Assembly (NCBI RefSeq): GCF_947568905.1
Contig: NC_079168.1
Span: 73,718,001 to 73,782,000 of the forward strand
Direction of reading: 5' to 3'
Length of the DNA: 64,000 nucleotides
DNA from: Ostrea edulis
Lineage: Eukaryota
Shown here in pieces: positions 2,183 through 59,764 of this stretch (the first letter of the stretch is position 1; each line of letters opens with the position of its first letter). The translations under genes were made by a program, and so were the position numbers. Below the pieces are notes generated by a model. That model saw nothing but the letters and a program-made list of their open reading frames with translations, was not told the DNA's origin and did not search any database.

Positions 2183-2451
2183 TATTTAGACCGCCGCGGT
2201 TCTAATCCCGGCCGCGACAAACCTCAGTCGTTAAAACAGGTAGTGAAAGTTCCATCGCCAAACGCTGATATGCATCAGGTGTAAATGTCACGGGTCCTCG
2301 GAGATGACCTTAAACACGGATGTCCCGTGTTACAGTAGGTGTGGCACGCTAAAGAAACCTCATTGCTCCATGGCTGTAGGCGCCGAGCAAAGGCCTAAAT
2401 TTGAAACCCTTCACCGTTCTTCACCGTTCTTCACCGTGGACCATCGTGACC
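2183..2451 (+). mobile_element. tRNA-derived Meta/MESC-type SINE, 5' part (3' part resumes at about 4969-5010)
   Basis: B-box-like GGTTCTAATCCCGG; body similar to other copies in the window (GTGTGGCACGCTAAAGA, GCCGAGCAAAGGCCTAAATTT). The expected tail GGTGATGTCTCC...GTGAAAAATTCTCGAG appears only after 4968. Confidence 0.7.
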
Positions 2452-13000: not shown

Positions 13001-16000
13001 ATACTGAACTCAAATAGTATATCAAAAGCATGCTCTACACGATTTTAATATAACTAGTGTACAAATGGTTTTGTCAGGTTGAAGCAGGAGAGGAGGTGTT
13101 CTTGATTAAGGATGGTTCCAGTAAAACCTCACTAGTGATCACCAACAAATATGGCATAGAGGTTGGATACTTGAAATCTGATGTCGCCACTGTTCTCTCA
13201 CCGTTAAGGGACAGGAAAGTCATAGGAATTGAGGGGTTAGAACTTACAATATGAACTTCCATTATTCACGTGTTACATTTATTTCTACTCACATTGATTT
13301 CTCAAAACTACTGGCGTTTCAGTAATTTAATCTTGGCCACTAAAAGCAATTTCGTTGGTACATAAATTCACGGTTTTTTTTTCTAAATAAAAACTATTTT
13401 TCTTCTCTAGATTTCAATTTGTAGTTTTCTTCATCATGCGAAAACATTTTAAAATTTTTAAATGTTGAACATATACATGAAATGATTAAAGAGTATCAAA
13501 TCAATGTTAAGCATATCATAAAGACAGTTTTATTAATACTTTTTCTAATGACACTTTTATTAAAATATCTTCTCCACATTTGTCTGTCTTTTTAAATGAA
13601 ACACAGGACTGCTGTACATGGCAGTAAGAATGCCCTGCTTAACAGCATTGGTGTTGATCTAAACATATTTGGAAAGGAGGACCATAAAATATCTACTTTG
13701 AAAAAAATAATCGACATCGGGGTGCCAGTAAAAGTTGACATTGGTCCATCAGATTCAAAAGAAGAAATCTCGAAAATCCTTGGCTGCGAGGAAAAATCAG
13801 ATGTGTATTTTGACGAAAACCATTTCTTAAACATGAAGGAGGTAATTCATTGTATGTTTGCGTATAAGGTCAGCATTCAATACCAACTTATTATGCGTCT
13901 GAATTATCTCGATTTCGTTATTTGAAATATACTGAGGATGCATCTAAATGTTTCGCTTAACCAACGCTTATCATGAAATGCTAGCAAAATTTGAAATTCA
14001 TCAGAAGCTAAACGCTTGAAAAGAAGTATCGCTGTTTTCTATTGTAACTGACTCAAATCACGGGCTTCCGGTGAAACGGAAGGATATATTCAGAGATATT
14101 CCTGTCTCAGAGATCTTATAGATTAAATGAATGTAACTGTATGTCAGTAATAACGTGAATTAAAACTTACACACTGATAACGATACAATTTTCTTGACTC
14201 CAAAAAGTCCAATCCTGTTCCACCGTTTCATCAACATTGTCTTCATTAGAGAATTGAAATCTGGGCGAGTTTTAAAAATACGGATGACTCTAAAAGCTTT
14301 AAGGAGGAATGCAACACAAGATATTTGATATGGATGAAAAGTGAAGGATATTTGTAACAATATTTTGAAATTGAAAACTTTCAAATTTACTTTATTCAGT
14401 CAACAATTGGAGGTTTATTAGAAAGCAAAAAAAAAAAAAATAAAAATTAAAATAATAATAATAATAATAATAAATTAAAACCCCTGCTGGACTCGAAACC
14501 GCGATTTACTGTTCAGTTACTTGAAATGAAGTCAAATATTGCTGACATTTCTTGTTATATTTTCATCCATGTCTTAAAAGGGAGTCAGCCATTATGGCGA
14601 TGTGGAGTATCTCCTTAAGCCAAGTTTGGCGAATTTAAAACGAGAAGGAAGTGGATTTTACAACATTTATGAGAAGATAACACTGGGTGAAAATGGTGAT
14701 GGTATTAGTGCAGTGTACATGTCAAGTATGATTTGTAAATGAAACTAATGGACACATCATGTGATTGGAAATTCCTTCATACTCATGACTGATAGACGTC
14801 AGCTATCTTTTTCCGCACAGGAAAATCATGCCTCATTGACATCAAAATAGTTTACATTCATTTAAGGAGGCATACTACATCGTAGCACTGGCTGACTTCC
14901 TTTTTCTCTAAAGTTTCATCGCCTAGCTGTATAGCTCAGTCGGTTAAAGTGTCGGTTGTTGATCTGTAGATCGTGTTTTTATATTTACTAAAATTGCACT
15001 TTTTAAAATAAAAATGAATTAGTTTTGATAAATGGAAATGTTTAATGGTGTGAGACTGTAAGTAACTTTATGCTCTGCTAAATTTTATTTCCAGATTGCC
15101 ACTTATAATTTTTTATGTGTTTAATATTTTGATGTATAAATCTCCAAGATACTTACAGAAATAATTCACCAATAATTGGCATCCATCAGTTTTCCTAAGC
15201 TTCTAAAATTTGCAAATAGGGATGTTGACATTGCACTTGCACCTTTAAGGAGAAGTATACCTCCACAAATTGCATTTGGTATCTTCATGATGACGTGTCC
15301 ATATGAGTGAAAGATTCTCGAGAGGGACAATGTACAATCAATCAAATAAAATATTGTGTTAAAATCATACGTCACAGTCCCTTCCAATTACATATGTTGA
15401 AGACATTTTGTAGAAATATGCATGCATCTATTATTATACACCACACGATGTTGCGTAGGGTATAATGTTTTTGATCGGTCCGTCCGTCAGCCCATTTCTT
15501 GTTAGTGCAACTCTTCTGAGACCGCTAAACAGAATTTTATGAAACTTTGTAGTTATTAAGGACACACTGTGTAGATGTGCATATTCCCAGGAAAATCTGA
15601 TTCAATAATTTTTATGGGAGTTATGTCCCTTTTGAGCTTAGAATTTCTAGCCCATCTGTCCTGTTCTTGCAGTAATGCATATCAATTACCGTTCATTATG
15701 TGACGCGTTGCCAAGCAATGTTGGAGCGTAGGGTATGTGAGCTTGCTCACACTTGCTTTCTTTCATTTATACATTTACATATATATACATGAGGGGAAAG
15801 GTATTTCTGATTTTTACAGATGTATTGTGTTTCATACATTTATCTTTAACAATATACAGGAAGCAGACACAGTCAACACAATATTTGAAAATTTGACAGA
15901 AGACGATAAACAGACGCCGGCAGAGCCATCAAAGGTTTGAGAAATTACTATTTCACGATTCAGTCAGTTTCATTTCCGAGACATTACTTTGATGAAAAAC

Positions 16001-19000: not shown

Positions 19001-22000
19001 CAAAAACTACACTTATTGTAGCACCCCTGTCTGTCATCAATGTATGGCAGGTAAGAAACTTTTATCTGGAAAAGCGCTTCAGCGGATCGTAAAATATTCT
19101 GTTAGAATATCATATGTGATGTAACAGATGTACTTTATATATTGTCATATACAGTGTACTTTCCCTGTTGTCTTCAGAGAGCCAGAAAAATTACTGAATG
19201 CATTTGATGTCTAGGATTTCTTTATTGAGTATTATATATTTTTGCAGACCCAAATTACTCAGCATGTTGATCCGATGCATCCACTGAGAGTGTCCACTTT
19301 CCATGGCAGGAACAGATCAGAGGTGTCTGTTCTCACCGAAAATGATATTGTTATTACATCGTACGACACACTGAGGATAGATGCTAAGGTATGTAAAATC
19401 GATATTCTTTGATTATTCTCATCTCTGATTTATCCAGGGGGTTCGTATTCGCACAACTCTTAATTTTGTATTCCTTATAAGAGTTATGAGATTGATCACT
19501 GTTAGTTATCATCACCTTTTCATTAGATAGAAAAAAGTTATGAAAACTTCAAATAACATTCTTACATGTAGGGACTGAATGTTTTGTCTTCATATTTAGA
19601 TATCAATACATTACAGTCATGCTTTATTGGCACATGCGCACATTGTAGAGCTGATTGATACATTTACTGCTTAATAGCACATATGCACACTTTGTGCGAA
19701 TTGAACTGGGCACGCAATTAAGAAATATCGATTAAAATGACCCCCTTTCGGATATACATGCATCACTTAATGCGAGAAAATTCTTTGAAATATTTAAGCT
19801 GAAAGCTTTAAGCTAAAATATAACGTCTATAATATAATTCACCAATGGCGTAGCGGTGACCTAGTGATGATGACGCTTGCTTCACAACTGGGAAGAACCT
19901 GGGTTCGTAATCTAATCATCACTGGGTCAGACCCATATCCACATCAGCCCTGTATTTTAATCACCATCCATTAGAATTAATGGCATAATATATATCGTCA
20001 TCTTATCAACTTAACTTTAGGGACCTGGATTAGTACAGGTCCTCAGTACCCCTTGCTTTTCGTAGAAGGCGACTAAATGAGGCGGTCCTTCAGATAAGAC
20101 CTCAAAAACGAGACTCCATGCCACAACAGGTGTGGCACGATAAAAATCCCCCCCCCCTGCTCAAAAACTGGAATCGCCAGCAATGGTGAACGGTAATAGC
20201 TTAATAAAAGTGAAAAACAATTCTCGAGAGGGTCGTTCAACAATATATAATCAACCAATCACATAGCCGCAATCAATTAAATCAACTTTAGTAGTAAATA
20301 GACACATACACCCCGCCAATATATATAATTTTGTTCTTGGTATGTATCTTTTAATGTGTTTAGTTATATTCGTTATACGTACATGCTGTCAATTACGTAA
20401 TATTTGATGTGTATCAAACAATTATGTTTCACTCGACAGACGCAACGCACTCTACAACAGGTGAAATGGTTCCGAGTAGTACTGGACGAAGGGCACAAAA
20501 TAAAGAATCCTTCCTCTAAACAAACTCAGGCTATCAACAGCCTCCACTCAGAAAGAAGATGGATTTTAACAGGTAATTGACATAATGTCACGGTGATTGG
20601 ATATACATAATTGGTATCAATTTTTAATCCGAATATGGAATCGATTATCATCTTTGAAGGTTAAAATCGTCTGCAATACCGTGTAGATACTTTTTTCTAA
20701 ATGTTCAAGTCCCGTGGGGATCCGGGTTAGAATAGGTCCTCAGTATCCCCTTGCTTGTCGTAAGAGGCGACTGAATGGGGCGGTCCCTGCTCAATGGCCA
20801 TAAGTGCCGAGCATAGGCTTAAATTTTGCAGCCCTTCACCGGCAGTGGTGACGTCTCCATATGAGTGAAATATTCTTGAGAGGGACATTAAACAATAATT
20901 AATCAATTAATCAATCTAAATGTTCAAAAACATAACTGTAAATGCGCCTTTCCTGCAGCAGTGCAGTTCCAGTAGCATATTTGTATTTCCCCATGTATTA
21001 GCACAGTTAACAAGAATATAAGTCATGTCTTTTTTCCTGTATGAGTTACTTCTCAAAAGAAGTTTTTTATTATCGTAATTTCAAAAGATTTCCCCCATTT
21101 TTTTTTTATATTCTCTACCTTCCCACTTTCCTTCGTATATATCAGTACAATCCTAATGTGGATAATGAAATAACAGAATTAAAATTGAAATCTTGTAGGT
21201 ACCCCCATTCAGAACAAGATTGAGGAGTTATGGTCTCTCACATCATTTCTCAAAATCGACACCTTTACTGATATCAATCAGTGGAAGAAAATTATAGTGG
21301 ATCCTCTTGTGTATGGGGACGGGGATGCCAAGACGTATGTTTCATTTTGGACATCATTGTCAATGATAAATGAAATATTATGATGTTCGTTTCTTCTTAA
21401 TCTTGGTTTTGTTTACCTTAAAAATCCATAATGAAATAAAAAGCACTTAAGTTAATATCCTCGATTTTCTAGGATATTGAAATATATTCATAAAAATGAA
21501 AAGATGGCAATCTGCTGTATAGTTAATGTTTTTTAGTTTCATTATAATTAATCATGACTTGGATGACATTTGTACCTATAAAATATTTTGTATACCGGTA
21601 TTTTGATTGTCATAAGTGAATCGGTCAATGTTTTTTCCTGATCAAGATATAGGGCTCACGTCGGGTGTGACAGGTCGATAGCGGAGATGCTTACTCCACC
21701 TAGGCACCTGATCTCACCTCTGGTGTGTCCAGGGGTCCGTGTTTGCCCAACTTTCTATTTTGTATTGCTTATAGGAGTTATGAGATTGATCAGTGTTTGT
21801 TATCTTCACCTTTCATTTAGGCGCGTGTTTCATCTGGTGAACTTTATTGCACTGAGAAGAACAAAAACGTCCACTATAAACGGAGAGAAAATCATATCCT
21901 TACCTACGAAAAGGATATATGAAAGAGTGTTAGTGTTTTCTGATAAGGAACGGGAGATTTACGGAGAATTTGACAGAGGTTGCAAACAACTCATTCGTCG

Positions 22001-25000
22001 GTAATAATTACTATGTCCATCTCTTTTCTTAAAAAGCACATAGTACCTGATATTAAGTCGCCATAAATTAGATATTCAATAATTGAATATTATAAATGCA
22101 CATTGTATTTGGCTTCTTTTTTCCGATTTTGCTAGACTCATTGATGAGAGGAGACACCTCCAGGAAATTGGAATATTTTATGCAGCTTTAGTACGATTAC
22201 GACAGCTATGCTGTCACCCAGAAATTATTCCCCGCAAAGCCAAAGGTGTGTATAACCTAATCGCTTTTTATAAATATAAAAAATTCAAAATAATAAAAAA
22301 ACCAACCTCATTATTTTGCTTCACTTTGATTTAAGTAAGTACATCATGGGAAAGGGGAGATGTTTTCAATATATACATTTGACATAGGCTTGTTTCATTT
22401 TAAAACGCGGAAAATAATTCCTTTTGCTTGAACATTTATCATTAATGTTAGGTCGGTCATGACCTGGCATCGTGTTCAGAAGTAATCATCAAAGTCATTG
22501 GTGTTAGATTAAGTTGGAGAAGACGAAACACGAGTTAATGAACCTCAAATAAGTCGGATGTTTCATAAAGCAAGCTATTTCTAGGAAAGTGGTGTTAGCG
22601 GGGAGAATATTTACAATGGATATTAGAGATTATGCGGTAGTAAAAAATGAATAAAGCAAATAAGATAACAATGAAATGTAATGAAAATGAAAACAAAAAC
22701 TACATATACATAATACTATAGAATAAAAATGTCACCGCTAAACCTCTAGCTGACTGAAGTAGTCTTGACGAAATATAGGATGTAAACACGAGACCAACCA
22801 GACTGCAACTATTTAAGCCTTGGTTTATTTATTTCCTAAAGATATTTGCAACACTTCCATAAAGCTGTATTGACGTGATGGCATGTCTTGTTTATATTTA
22901 ATTTGAATTTTAGTTGGCAAAGTTAAGTTGGCTAGGTCTCTCACAGACTTTGACTCCACACAATCATCGGTGGAGAAGCTAGCGTCCTTACTACGACTAT
23001 CTGAAAATGACTGCTGTAGTATTTGTTTAGAAGAAATCTGTGTTAAAGAAGGCATGAAGGCACCTGTTATAACGGACTGCGATCATGTTTTCTGCAAAGT
23101 ATGTATTCTTGAGGTGATTCAACAGCATGGGGCTTGTCCGAACTGTCGTGGGGGACTGACAATGAACTCGATAACGGAATGCCCTCCTGAGCAACTCGCT
23201 CTTCGATTAGGAAGGCCTGAATTAGATAAATCGGTGTTCAGTACAAAGGTATGCTATATTTTATTCACAATTAATGTAGAAATGATCGAGCTGTATAAAT
23301 CGCAACAAAAATATTATCTGATAATTTTTTAAGAATTATGAGAATCGTTTCATTTTATTCAGACAACAGCATTGATGAATGATCTACTGCATTTAAGAGA
23401 GAATTGCCCGGATGTTAAGAGTGTAATTGTTTCGGAATTCACTACTCTTTTGGATGTGATTGAGGAACCATTAAAGTGAGTACGATATCGACAGCTTTTC
23501 TCGTAGCGTTTTCTTGCTCATAAAATATTCTTTTGATTTATTGTATATTGTTTAACGTACCTCTCACGAATCTTTCACTCATGAATATGGAAACGTCACC
23601 ATTCCCGGTGAAGGGCTTCAAAATTTGGGCCTATGCTCGGCGCTTACAGCAATTGAGCAGTGAGAAATCTTTATCATGCCACACCTGCTGTAACACGTGG
23701 CCTCGGTTTTTGCGGTCTCATCCGAAGGACAGCCCCATTTAGTCGTCTCTTACGACAAGACGAGTGTGGCAAGAGAAAATCAGAAATATGACTACAAACA
23801 GAAATTTTACAGATAATTTTGTAACGATAATCATGCGTTCAGTAGTCTTATTTTGTTTGGCTATGAATTTTGAATTTTCGTACACTGTAACTTTTTAATT
23901 TGTTTCATTGTAAGATCTGGAAACACTGAGTATTCAAACTTATTTTAATCATTTCTCTTTCAGAGAACGCTAAATGATTAACAATTGAACAAACTTCTTT
24001 AACTATCATCACGCTGCATTGTTGCCCAGCAATATGTCAATATGTATAATGTAATGAAACAATTAATTAATTTTTGTGTTACAAGGTATTGGATTCAACC
24101 ATTGAACTATGTTTTTACATTATGACTATTATTTAATAAGATAGAAACTTCAGGTGATGTCAACCAAAACTGTGTGCTGTAATACCGATTCAAAATTGAA
24201 ATTAACATCGAATAATTTTTACTATTTACCAAATTCAGGCTATTCCAATTGGGTTTAATTTTGAAATATTGTTGACTGTATGTACACAATGTTCTGTTTT
24301 GAGTGCCCTCGTGAAAATGCCTTTTGAACCACCGACAGACAATGCGTTTTATGAAATGTAACTCAAAATTTATCCTCAGGGACTACATTATTTATTTTAC
24401 TTTTACCTACACCATTCCATGAATATATTCATTTCCGTTTTATTTCCGTATCCTTTCAAAACATACAATGAAGTTCGGAAGAATATTTTCGTGGGATTCC
24501 GGGTTAGAATAGGTCCGTATCTTAGTTACTCATCCATAAAACATAACGCCACTTGACGTTCTTTTGTTTTTTACGGCCAAGTCGAAAATTCTTGTACTCA
24601 TATTGGTACGTCGCCATCTGTACGTGAATTGCCCAATTTACTACGCATGGTGGTCAAGGATGTAAGATCTTTAATATTGTGCCAACATCTACTTTTAAGG
24701 TCAAATCAGAATGGCCGGTTATTTTCGCTTTCAATGCTATCGACTTCAAATCATCTTCAGTTTGTTGTGCCTGCTAGAATCCAAATTTCATGCAAACCAG
24801 GACCCTTTTTTTGTTTTACGATCTTTCAAGAATTGTTTTACTCATATTGAGGCATCACCATCTGTAGGTGAAGTAGTACAAATTTAGACATATGCCTTAC
24901 TTTCAGGACCGTAACAGTGAGGGTTCTTTAACGTGCTAACGCTTGCTGCGAAGCGTTTGAAAGTGTTAAGGCGTATATTCTAGACCACAGTGACTATAGT

Positions 25001-35920: not shown

Positions 35921-36287
35921 AAACGGAGAGTGCTGTGAAAAACAAATACTAAATAGAACTGTGATTGATTGATTGTATATTGGTTAACGTCCCACTCGAC
36001 AAATTTTCACTCATATGGAGACGTTAGAACCATGAAAAACTAGAAATTAGTGAGAAAACGACATTATTAACCGAATAAAGCATTGCTTACAAAGTTAAAT
36101 ATGTTAATGCCGCATTACACTTGTAATCATTAGTTATATCGATCGATACAAAAATAATAGTAAAATTGTAAGGGCAACAAATCTAATAAAAGCGTTGAAT
36201 TCCTTTATATTGAAACAGAGAGGTAGAAGAAAAACCCCCAGAGCAGTCCAGATTCCATGTGTTTTCCGAGGTAGATACTTTGTAGAA

Positions 36288-39885: not shown

Positions 39886-39924
39886 AAAATCAGATACCGA
39901 CGTGTTAACGTCAGAGAATATCGT

Positions 39925-41822
39925 AACCCTTACCAAACAGATATCGGGAATAACCTAACCCTTACCAAACAGAGATCGGGAATACCCTAACCCTTACCAA
40001 ACAGATATCGGGAATACCCTAACTCTTACCAAACAGATATCGGGAATACCCCAACCCTTACCATACAGATATCAGGAAAACCCTAATCCTTACCATACAG
40101 ATATCAGGAAAACCCTAATCCTTACCATACAAATATCGGGAATAACCTAATCCTTACCAAACAGATATCAGGAAAAACCTAACTCTTACCAAACAGATAT
40201 CAGGAAAACCCTAATCCTTACCATACAGATATCTGGAAAACCCTAATCCTTACCAAACAGATATCAGGAAAAACCTAACTCTTACCAAACAGATATCAGG
40301 AAAAACTTAACCCTTACCAAAGAGATATCGGGAATACCCTAACCCTTACCAAACAGAAATCGGGAATACCCTAACCCTTACCATACAGATATCGGGAATA
40401 ACCCAACCCTTACCAAACAGAGATCGGGAATACCCTAACCCTTACCATACAGAAATCGGGAATACCCTAACTCTTACCAAACAGATATCGGGAATACTTC
40501 CAACCCTTACCATACAGATATCGGGAATAACCTAACCCTTACCAAACAGAAATCGGGAATACCCTAACCCTTACCAAACAGATATCGGGAATACCCTAAC
40601 TCTTACCAAACAGATATCGGGAATACCCCAACCCTTACCATACAGATATCGGGAATACTCCCAACCCTTACCAAACATAAATCGGGAATAACCTAACTCT
40701 TACCAAACAGATATCGGGATTACACTAACCCTTACCATACAGATATTGGGAATAGCCTGACCCTTACCGAACATATGTTGAGAATACACTAACCCTTACT
40801 AAACAGATATCGGGAATATCCTAACCCTTACCAAACAGATATCGGGAATACCCTAACCCTTACCATACAGATATCGGGAATACCCTAACCCTTACCAAAC
40901 AGATATCGGGAATAACCTAACCCTTACCAAATAGACATCGAGGATAATCTAACCCTTACCAAACAAATATCGGGAATACCCTAACCCTTACCATACAGAT
41001 ATCGGGAATACCCTAACCCTTACCATACAGATATCGGGAATACTCTAACCCTTACCAAACAGATATCGGGAATAACCTAACCCTTACCAAATAGACATCG
41101 AGGATAACCTAACCCTTACCATACAGATATCGGGAATACCCTAACCCTTACCATACAGATATCGGGAATACCCTAACCCTTACCATACAGATATCGGGAA
41201 TACTCTAACCCTTACTAAACAGATATTGGGAATACCCTATGTCTTGCCAAACAGATATCGGGAATATCCTAACTCTTACCATACATATATTAGGAATATC
41301 CTAACCCTTATCAAACAGATATTGGGAATAACCTAACCCTTACCGAACAGATGTTGGGAATACCCTAACCCTTACCATACAGATATCGGGAATACTCTAA
41401 CTCTTGCCAAACAGATATCGGGAATAACCTAACCCTTACCAAATAGACATCGAGGATAACCTAACCCTTACCAAACAAATATCGGGAATACCCTAACCCT
41501 TACCATACAGATATCGGGAATACCCTAACCCTTACCATACAGATATCGGGAATACTCTCACCCTTACTAAACATATATCGGGAATACTCATCTCTTGCCA
41601 AACAGATATCGGGAATACCCTAACTCTTACCATACAGATATCGGGAATACACAAACCCTATCAAATATATATCGGGAATAACTTAACCCTTACCATACAG
41701 ATATCGGGAATACCCCCAACTCTTACCATAGAGATATCGGGAATAACCTAACCTTTACCAAACAGATATCGGGAATAAACCAATCCTTACCAATCGAATA
41801 TCGAGAATAACCTAACCCTTAC
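39925..41822. repeat. 32-bp minisatellite, about 59 copies, containing CCCTAACCCTTA
   Basis: Unit CCCTAACCCTTACCA(A/T)ACAGATATCGGGAATA. Confidence 0.96.
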
Positions 41823-41974
41823 GAATGTGTTTGGTGCAGATCTTGCTGCTAGTTTACCGCAAGTCTGCAGTAAACAAAATTGTTTGCAACAAAAGGTTTT
41901 CCTTGTTTAGAGATGAAACTGACCTTCACCCATTTGATACGATATAATCTAATATGGTACAGTTTACGATTTAT

Positions 41975-42240
41975 GATTGATTGAATATTGTTTTACGTCC
42001 CTCTCCAGAATATTTTACTCGTATGGAGACGTCACCACTGCAAATGAAGGGCTGCAAAATTTAGGCCTATGCTCGGCACTTATGGCTATTGAGCAGGGAG
42101 GGATCTTTATCGTGTCACACCTGCTGTGACACGGGACCTCGGTTTTTGCGGTCTCATCCGAAGAACCGCCCCCATTTGGTCGCCTCTTACGACAAGCAAG
42201 GGAGTAATGAGGACCTATTCTAACCCGGATCCCCACGGGA
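41975..42240 (-). mobile_element. Full-length tRNA-less SINE-like element (structured-head family)
   Basis: Minus strand TCCCGTGGGGATCCGGGTTAGAATAGGTCCTCA...CAATCAATC. Confidence 0.88.
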
Positions 42241-59510: not shown

Positions 59511-59764
59511 ATATTCACGAGGGGATCTGGGTTAGAATAGGTCCCCCGTATCCCTTGCTTGTCATAAGAGGCAACTAAATGGGAGGGTCCTTCGGATGAT
59601 ACCGCAAAAACCGAGGCCCAGTGTCAAATCAGATTTGGCAGAATAAAGATCCCTCCCTGCTCAAAGGCTGTAAAGCGCCGAGCATAGACCTAAATTTTGT
59701 CTTCATATGAGTGAAAAATTATCGAAAGGGACGTTAAACAATGTACAATCAATCAATTAATTAA
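59511..59764 (+). mobile_element. tRNA-less SINE-like element inserted in a decayed Naiad RT (about 59340-59880)
   Basis: TCGTAAATT duplicated at 59502-59510 and 59765-59773. Confidence 0.8.

What the first reader, a model, noticed from the sequence alone, without database searches (positions are those of the whole stretch)
20709..20915. Retroposed SINE-like family with no tRNA head but a fixed, highly structured 5' end: candidate self-cleaving or promoter RNA
Five copies (20017, 20709, about 24489, 42240 minus, about 59514) start at essentially the same point and lack A/B boxes, yet share the body and tail of the tRNA-headed SINEs; two have clear TSDs (12 and 9 bp). The ~70-nt head can fold into a closing stem TCCCGT/ATGGGG (20710-15 / 20775-80), a stem GGGGATC/GGTCCTC (20716-22 / 20735-41), a hairpin GTCG/CGAC and a possible loop pseudoknot GGGT with A(C/T)CC. 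Substitutions in the 20017 copy (GGACCTG/CAGGTCC) and the 59514 copy convert wobbles or mismatches to Watson-Crick pairs in the same stem. The CUAA before the closing strand recalls the catalytic J4/2 strand of HDV-like ribozymes at the 5' ends of RTE and Ingi elements, but I could not fit a complete HDV fold. A self-processing head would explain a precise 5' end without a Pol III promoter.
Basis: partly seen in the sequence, partly recalled or inferred. Interest (0 to 1): 0.72.

Follow-up and report, generated by a model that had tools for sequence, protein, structure and literature searches.

The report
Known oyster LP-SINE, non-tRNA head
This is one internally deleted copy of a roughly 20,000-copy oyster jumping element of the "LP-SINE" type published in 2016, whose 72-base front end replaces the usual tRNA part; nothing computed here supports the idea that this front end cuts itself, and what it does has never been tested.

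Summary
The family is real. About 19,700 heads lie in this 895-Mb oyster genome. They almost always start at the same base, have unrelated upstream flanks, 10-16 bp target-site duplications and an (AATC)n tail. The copy at 20710-20914 has a 13-bp duplication and lacks about 65 internal bases.

The architecture matches the "LP-SINEs" of Matetovici et al. 2016 (PMC4758252): a ~70-nt head without tRNA features, and a body shared with a differently headed SINE. That paper reports them in Ostrea and Saccostrea, and it already proposed a promoter role and drew the ribozyme analogy. I could not check sequence identity with the published consensus, because the alignments are figures.

The ribozyme reading finds no support:
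- Rfam gives no match at E<=10.
- An HDV-type fold is topologically impossible.
- The folding energy equals that of shuffled sequence (z = 0.02).

Weak hints favour a Pol II-type start: a purine just before TCCCGT in 43 of 52 copies, and an internal TTTT.

I found no LINE carrying this head in this genome. Other agents of this scan studied the same family elsewhere in the genome and also reached LP-SINE. Their claim of homologues in RNA-virus 3' UTRs was not reproduced by my 8 viral scans and 1 metagenome scan.

Verdict: already known, with the head's function still open.

The parts
20696..20708 (+). 5' target-site duplication (13 bp, TCTAAATGTTCAA)
   Evidence: Repeated at 20915-20927.
20709..20709 (+). 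Extra purine (G) between the duplication and the first T of the head
   Evidence: It is not part of the duplicated target. In 17 of 33 copies with clear duplications an extra A (11) or G (6) lies here.
20710..20781 (+). 72-nt non-tRNA head (LP-type head)
   Evidence: It has the same start in ~20,000 copies. The head/body junction at 72/73 is set by the other-headed relative and by organism-B contigs (table 7).
20782..20849 (+). Body remnant; about 65 nt of the family body (consensus ~77-141) are deleted at 20784
   Evidence: BLAST of the full copy: query 1-76 maps to 20710-20784 and query 142-265 maps to 20784-20907.
20850..20914 (+). 3' tail ending in AATC-type short tandem repeats
   Evidence: The tail core motif is found at 6 sites in the window. 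Tail-only fragments begin at this same point.
20915..20927 (+). 3' target-site duplication
41974..42240 (-). Full-length copy of the same family
59515..59764 (+). Older copy of the same family, with a 13-bp duplication (one mismatch)
20018..20262 (+). Old divergent copy; its first ~5 bases do not align
23531..23759 (-). 5'-truncated copy that starts at head position 45
24490..24516 (+). Isolated 27-nt head fragment, not a full element
2193..2420 (+). Member of a second abundant SINE family with a different, B-box-bearing 5' part. It shares the body with the LP family from position 73.
   Evidence: 2,707 first-look candidates.

Best explanation
The stretch 20710-20914 is an internally deleted copy of a young oyster SINE with about 20,000 copies. 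It is mobilised by a LINE and belongs to the published LP-SINE type.

Shown here: the element consists of a 72-nt non-tRNA head, a body shared with a differently headed SINE family, and a tail ending in (AATC)n. It is flanked by target-site duplications.

Inferred: the head is a module of the kind found at LINE 5' ends. It lets a master copy make RNA that begins at the element's own first base. The most likely mechanism is an internal, downstream Pol II-type promoter, as in the LINE 5' UTR promoters of jockey, I factor and L1Tc Pr77. Transcription would start at a purine one base before TCCCGT. The RNA would then be copied into new sites by a LINE reverse transcriptase that recognises the tail.

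The head is not an HDV-like ribozyme. I put identity as an LP-type SINE at about 0.9, and the promoter mechanism at about 0.45.
For: Identity:
- Copy number is 19,744, evenly split between strands.
- The 5' end is fixed and the flanks are unrelated.
- Variable 10-16 bp duplications are present in 33 of 52 copies.
- The tail ends in a short tandem repeat.
- Median divergence from the consensus is 3.6%.
- The body is shared with another-headed SINE from position 73. In another species the body is preceded by a different sequence at the same junction (table 7).
- All of this parallels Sgl_LP and Oco/Oed_LP in PMC4758252, section 10.
- The same 5' boundary is seen in contigs of three organisms (loose ends at 1501-1503).

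Mechanism:
- The base just before T1 is A in 35 and G in 8 of 52 copies, against about one third A expected.
- In 17 of 33 copies with clear duplications this purine is extra to the target site. That fits an RNA that starts at a purine.
- 45 of 52 copies carry TTTT inside the body on the sense strand. A Pol III transcript would tend to stop there. The B-box-bearing relative has only TTT at that place.
- No tRNA, 5S or 7SL match was found.
Against: - No recognisable initiator, TATA or downstream promoter element could be placed with the right spacing (my reading of the sequence).
- No raw RNA reads were available, so no 5' end, cap or strand could be observed. The runs were contigs only, and the table of begin/end places was empty.
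- No LINE with this head was found in this genome. Four LINE families were inspected. Of the first 100 of 286 pattern hits listed, nearly all were indel-bearing SINE copies and none showed a recurrent non-SINE continuation.
- Sequence identity with the published LP head could not be checked, because the alignments are figures and no supplement is held.
- Earlier agents of this scan report homologues in RNA-virus 3' UTRs. If true, that would favour a function at the RNA level.
Confidence: 0.55

Rival explanations
1. The head works as a folded but non-catalytic RNA. It could be a pseudoknotted 5' module that stabilises the RNA, stalls a 5'-3' exonuclease so that read-through transcripts are trimmed to a fixed end, or recruits the LINE protein. 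On this reading the fixed 5' end is made or kept after transcription.
For: - The consensus can form a 7-bp stem (7-13 with 26-32), a 4-bp hairpin (48-51 with 59-62) and alternative C-run/G-run pairings that would make pseudoknots.
- The first 30 nt are invariant between three oyster species, while positions 31-72 carry five changes in one of them. Among these, U31>C turns a G-U pair into G-C, and U35>C together with A64>G could be a compensated pair (table 3).
- According to PMC4758252 the same ~70 nt head otherwise unrelated LINE 5' UTRs.
- Earlier agents report a conserved knot and viral homologues. I have not verified this.
Against: - The folding energy is no better than shuffles (z = 0.02).
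- There is no covariation above chance in 61 copies, although decaying copies are a weak test.
- There is no Rfam match, and that library includes xrRNA families.
- Eight viral scans and one metagenome scan with head-derived patterns gave no viral homologue.
Confidence: 0.25
2. The head is a self-cleaving ribozyme, HDV-like or of a new class, that cuts at its own 5' edge.
For: - The 5' end is precise and there is no Pol III promoter.
- HDV-like ribozymes do sit at the 5' ends of R2, RTE, LOA and L1Tc elements (PMC5786205; PMC4758252).
- A CUAAAU strand follows a hairpin and precedes a G-run.
Against: - No hit to HDV, CPEB3, drz-Agam, hammerhead, twister, pistol, hatchet or any other Rfam ribozyme at E<=10 on either strand.
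- The only complement of bases 1-6 within 170 nt is ATGGGG at 66-71. With that as P1, one base remains inside the 72-nt module for P1.1, P4, J4/2 and the P2 3' strand, so the nested double pseudoknot cannot be built.
- The alternative P1 at 7-13 / 26-32 leaves 12 nt for P2 and P3, and it would remove bases 1-6, which every copy keeps.
- The extra purine at -1 is not expected from cleavage at T1.
Confidence: 0.07
3. The head has no function of its own. A few master copies sit behind fortuitous promoters, and the head is a passenger fragment fixed by founder effect.
For: - The head is almost uniform within the genome, which fits few masters (table 3).
- No LINE donor was found here.
Against: - A flank promoter would start upstream and give copies with shared extra 5' sequence, but the flanks are unrelated.
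- The same boundary holds in three species. According to PMC4758252 it also holds in snails, scallops, an insect SINE and three LINE families.
Confidence: 0.1

Closest known systems
LP-SINEs of molluscs (Sgl_LP of Saccostrea, Oco/Oed_LP of Ostrea, Hdi/Hmi_LP, Lsa_2; Matetovici et al. 2016, PMC4758252)
   Same: Both have a ~70-nt non-tRNA head at the extreme 5' end, variable target-site duplications and a short tandem repeat at the 3' end. As in Sgl_LP, the body is shared with differently headed SINEs. The host is an oyster.
   Different: Sequence identity to the published consensus could not be checked. The hexamer before the repeats is mostly AATATT here (AATATA in some copies). The paper lists AATATA and ACTAAA for Haliotis and Ostrea, and AGTATA for Saccostrea.
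Bipartite non-autonomous LINEs and SINEs carrying LINE 5' UTR pieces (Kojima 2018, PMC5786205)
   Same: These are short elements that keep the 5' end and the 3' end of a LINE.
   Different: Here a SINE-type body lies between the two ends, and no donor LINE was found in this genome.
Pr77 of L1Tc/ingi (a 77-nt 5' module with promoter and HDV-like ribozyme activity; cited in PMC4758252)
   Same: It is a short module at the very 5' end, shared by otherwise unrelated retroposons.
   Different: Pr77 folds as an HDV-like ribozyme. This head cannot take that fold.
HDV-like ribozymes of R2, RTE and LOA LINEs (Ruminski et al. 2011, as cited in PMC5786205)
   Same: They occupy the same position at the element's 5' end. 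The idea is also the same: the end is made by processing.
   Different: The defining fold is not met and there is no Rfam hit.
Internal Pol II promoters of insect LINEs (jockey, I factor, Doc; my own knowledge, not checked here)
   Same: The promoter lies wholly downstream of the start site, so it is carried along with each copy.
   Different: Those promoters have an initiator at +1 and a downstream element near +28. No such pair fits here.

Membership tests
LP-SINE (Matetovici 2016) | Non-tRNA head of about 70 nt at the extreme 5' end | tested here: met
   The head is 72 nt long. The junction at 72/73 comes, and the fixed start.
LP-SINE (Matetovici 2016) | Head homologous to the 5' end of LINEs (Nimb-17_LMi, I-3_DR, RTE-9_CPB) | not testable with these tools
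   The reference sequences are not held. No head-bearing LINE was found in the own genome.
LP-SINE (Matetovici 2016) | Variable-size target-site duplications directly flanking the element | tested here: met
   33 of 52 copies have duplications of 10-16 bp.
LP-SINE (Matetovici 2016) | 3' terminal short tandem repeats | tested here: met
   An (AATC)n tail is present in nearly all copies.
LP-SINE (Matetovici 2016) | Body and/or tail shared with tRNA-headed SINEs | tested here: inconclusive
   The body is shared with the family at 2193-2420, which has a 10/11 B-box match. The tRNA origin of that head is not confirmed, and its tail is not shown to be shared.
HDV-like self-cleaving ribozyme | Nested double pseudoknot in which P1 starts at the cleavage site, followed by P2, P3/L3, P1.1, P4 and a J4/2 cytosine, all within the module | tested here: not met
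   The only P1 partner of bases 1-6 is 66-71, which leaves no room for the rest. There is no Rfam HDV, CPEB3 or drz hit at E<=10.
Other small self-cleaving ribozymes (hammerhead, twister, twister-sister, pistol, hatchet, hairpin) | Match to the family covariance model | tested here: not met
   The only match of any family at E<=10 on either strand of L008:1440-1800 is a spurious frameshift-element hit at E = 4.4. Nothing reaches gathering score in the window.
tRNA-derived SINE (SINE2) | A box and B box of a Pol III type 2 promoter in the head | tested here: not met
   The best B-like stretch, GGTTAGAATAG, matches 8 of 11 and lacks the invariant C56 and C61. No A box is present. ARAGORN finds none and the pattern search finds none.
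5S- or snRNA-derived SINE (SINE3, SINEU) | Head matches 5S rRNA or U1/U2 | tested here: not met
   No Rfam match at E<=10.

The most novel reading that the evidence does not exclude
The 72-nt head is a compact RNA device that fixes its own 5' end after transcription. It could be a new class of self-cleaving RNA or an exonuclease-stalling knot. It would be traded between LINEs, SINEs and, as earlier agents claim, RNA-virus 3' UTRs across animal phyla.
Probability: 0.12. Interest if true: 0.8.

Novelty: already known. Interest (0 to 1): 0.28.

Why it matters
SINEs are defined as Pol III elements. LP-SINEs are the exception, and with about 20,000 young copies this oyster family shows that the exception can be very successful.

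The open question is how a 72-nt module gives a retroposon a precise 5' end without a tRNA promoter. It has stood since 2016 and can be settled at the bench with this family, by 5' end chemistry, a reporter assay and a cleavage assay. The finding itself adds no new kind of element.

Tried and rejected
1. HDV-like fold. Rejected on topology and by Rfam.

2. tRNA, 5S or 7SL origin of the head. No support. A short resemblance of GGTTAG-A to the 5S internal element and to a B box is too weak to count.

3. Search for a LINE with this head in the own genome. None of these carried the head or the SINE tail:
- RNase H-bearing LINEs;
- a young 5.5-kb LINE and two other families;
- a head 3' anchor followed by 'not body' letters, which gave 286 hits; nearly all of the first 100 listed were indel-bearing SINE copies and none showed a recurrent non-SINE continuation.

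4. Viral homologues. Eight scans of viral contigs gave only chance hits in large phage-like contigs. One search had a spacing error of one N.

5. One metagenome scan. It gave three real hits, all non-coding and eukaryote-like (L234; L236 and L237 are the same locus), and no virus.

6. Literature search for the sequence strings. No papers.

7. Search for papers linking xrRNA and retrotransposons. Nothing relevant.

8. RNA evidence. All 24 runs are kept as contigs, so no starts, ends or strand could be read.

9. Two pattern searches failed through my own errors: a wrong gap length, and an anchor specific to one copy.

10. The fragments at 24490 and 35966-36030 are not starts or ends of a LINE. 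Their neighbouring DNA is not repeated together with them.

Full report
WHAT IS THERE

The window is AT-rich eukaryotic DNA (GC about 35%). It comes from an 895-Mb assembly with ten chromosome-sized contigs.

The element at 20710-20914 starts with TCCCGTGGGG and ends in AATC-type repeats. It is flanked by a 13-bp duplication at 20696-20708 and 20915-20927, with a single G between the duplication and the first T. Compared with the full-length copy at 42240-41974 (minus strand) it lacks about 65 internal bases.

Other members in the window:
- 59515-59764, an older copy with a 13-bp duplication;
- 20018-20262, an old copy whose best match elsewhere is 78%;
- 23759-23531 (minus strand), a 5'-truncated copy that starts at position 45;
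- 24490-24516, a 27-nt head fragment, not an element.

GENOME-WIDE

- A 22-nt head core with up to two mismatches occurs 19,744 times: 9,802 forward, 9,942 reverse, and none in the reversed control.
- In 291 kb of fetched loci a profile of the head found 80 hits. Of these, 61 begin at head position 1 or 2, and their upstream flanks are unrelated. A few of these loci overlap the window, so some copies are counted twice.
- Of 52 distinct full-length copies, 33 have clear duplications of 10-16 bp.
- The modal length is 252-254 nt to the end of the tail core, and the median divergence from the consensus is 3.6%. This sample is biased towards the best matches.
- The base just before the first T is A in 35 copies, G in 8, T in 6 and C in 3.
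- In 17 of the 33 copies with clear duplications this purine is extra to the target site (A 11, G 6). The RNA therefore most likely begins with a purine one base before TCCCGT.

WHERE THE HEAD ENDS

A second abundant family has at least 2,707 first-look candidates. Its member at window 2193-2420 carries GGTTCTAATCC, a 10/11 match to a B box, in its 5' part. It shares the body with the LP family from position 73 onward at 77% identity.

In contigs of another organism, the sequence that precedes position 73 is also different (table 7). The head is therefore bases 1-72, and heads have been swapped on a common body.

I could not confirm that the other head derives from a tRNA.

LITERATURE

Matetovici et al. 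2016 (PMC4758252, section 10) describe exactly this architecture as "LP-SINEs". Their features are:
- a ~70-bp head homologous to the first ~70 bp of Nimb-17_LMi, I-3_DR and RTE-9_CPB;
- variable duplications;
- 3' tandem repeats.

They report them in Littorina, Haliotis, pectinids, Ostrea edulis/conchaphila and Saccostrea. [quoted passage not shown]

The authors propose that the head is a LINE promoter, possibly for Pol II. They point to the L1Tc/ingi 77-nt module, which has both promoter and ribozyme activity, and they state that experiments are needed. No later paper in the library uses the term.

Kojima 2018 (PMC5786205) gives the wider context of LINE 5' UTR pieces in SINEs and lists the LINE clades with 5' HDV-like ribozymes.

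I could not align my consensus with the published one, because the alignments are figures and no supplement is held. Membership therefore rests on architecture and host.

THE RIBOZYME IDEA

- Rfam at gathering score finds nothing in the window.
- At E<=10 on a consensus-like copy, both strands, the only hit is a spurious frameshift element in the body. No HDV, CPEB3, drz-Agam, hammerhead, twister, pistol or hatchet match appears.
- Upstream flanks are unrelated, so any ribozyme must lie wholly downstream of its cut. According to the 2016 paper the module is only ~70 nt long, so the ribozyme must also fit within 72 nt.
- Within 170 nt the only full complement of bases 1-6 is ATGGGG at 66-71. 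Using that as P1 leaves one base for P1.1, P4, J4/2 and the P2 3' strand.
- Using 7-13 / 26-32 as P1 leaves 12 nt for P2 and P3, and it would discard bases 1-6, which all copies keep.
- Extending the fold into the body gives a P4-like hairpin and an A-rich strand, but no P2. It would also not carry over to other LP elements.

THE 'HIGHLY STRUCTURED' CLAIM

- The minimum free energy of bases 1-79 is -27 kcal/mol, against -27.06 +/- 3.44 for shuffles (z = 0.02).
That is the same as when partners are shuffled among sequences (94.4).
- The covariation score is 0.077 against 0.076. One pair shows a double change, against 1.4 expected.
- Inserted copies decay neutrally, so this is a weak test of the master gene.
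- Between species there is a little more. In contigs of one other organism the dominant head differs at positions 31 (U>C, which makes G8-C31), 35 (U>C), 37 (C>U), 46 (U>G) and 64 (A>G). Positions 1-30 are unchanged in all runs (table 3).
- The 35/64 pair of changes could be compensatory. It is a single case and I cannot tell whether the two changes are linked.

PROMOTER OR RNA MODULE

Weak evidence for a Pol II-type start:
- the purine start;
- a sense-strand TTTT inside the body in 45 of 52 copies, where the B-box-bearing relative has TTT;
- the absence of any Pol III head.

Against it, or left open:
- I can place no initiator or downstream element with proper spacing.
- All public runs that hold the element are kept as contigs. 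These show only that the element, with the same 5' boundary, is present in runs of three organisms, including RNA libraries, and that it lies inside longer contigs.

SEARCH FOR RELATIVES

I found no LINE carrying the head in this genome.
- An RNase H-bearing 4.3-kb LINE with an (AAG)n tail lacks both the head and the SINE tail.
- So do a young 5.5-kb LINE with ORFs of 364 and 1,282 aa and two further families.
- A pattern asking for the head's 3' end followed by non-body letters returned 286 places. Nearly all of the first 100 listed were SINE copies with indels, and no recurrent non-SINE continuation appeared.

One metagenome scan, with a pattern that leaves the main stem free, gave three true hits. 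All are non-coding, eukaryote-like DNA.

EARLIER WORK IN THIS SCAN

After I had found the 2016 paper, the scan's notes showed that the same family had been examined at six other places in this genome, with the same LP-SINE verdict.

Two of those notes say the module also heads an I-type LINE and occurs in 3' UTRs of invertebrate RNA viruses. I tried to reproduce this with eight viral-contig scans built from different parts of the head. All hits were chance matches in phage-like contigs. The claim stays unverified by me. It is the main reason I keep 0.25 on an RNA-level function.

VERDICT

The observation of a fixed-end, non-tRNA SINE family is solid. The family is of a published kind in its published host group. 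The self-cleavage reading has no support. The head's function remains an open question that experiments can settle.

Noticed in passing
window 39916-41822: A minisatellite with a 32-bp unit, 59.6 copies and 86% matches. It shows strong strand skew (GC skew -0.35) and ends about 150 bp from the SINE copy at 41974-42240.
   Followed up: partly
window 35966-36030 (-) and 15288-15344 (+): Two tail-only fragments of about 57-60 nt, both beginning at the same point (GACGTCTCC / GACGTGTCC). The DNA upstream of the first is unique in the genome. The cause could be a preferred stop of reverse transcription or a processed RNA end.
   Followed up: partly
window 20884-20893 and the tail of all copies: The tail holds GACGTTAAAC (GACATTAAAC in this copy). 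From memory, this equals 10 bases of the plant-virus 'coremin' motif, which stalls Xrn1. It may be coincidence and was not tested.
   Followed up: no
G000 C1:1005799/1005878, C1:2419018/2419058, C1:12631035/12631071: Pairs of head cores lie 36-79 nt apart on the same strand. Many 'goes back ~32' joints appear in DNA contigs (tables 5 and 5c). Together these point to recurrent tandem duplication of the first ~33 nt of the head.
   Followed up: no
L255:848-6354 and L256:854-6360: A young 5.5-kb LINE with intact ORFs of 364 and 1,282 aa. The two copies are 99.7% identical, and at least 9 copies have the full 1,282-aa frame. It is probably active. It is not the SINE's partner, since neither the head nor the tail matches.
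   Followed up: partly
L117 (minus strand) and L119:4466-8784: A 4.3-kb LINE with an RNase H domain and an (AAG)n tail. Copies are 98% identical and start at CACAGGGTA.
   Followed up: partly
window 2193-2420: A second abundant SINE family (at least 2,707 first-look candidates) with a B-box-like GGTTCTAATCC and a body related to the LP family. Its 3' part holds a short CTTCACCGTT tandem.
   Followed up: partly
window 24806-24896: An unrelated ~90-nt repeat with 654 first-look candidates in the genome at 82-90% identity.
   Followed up: no
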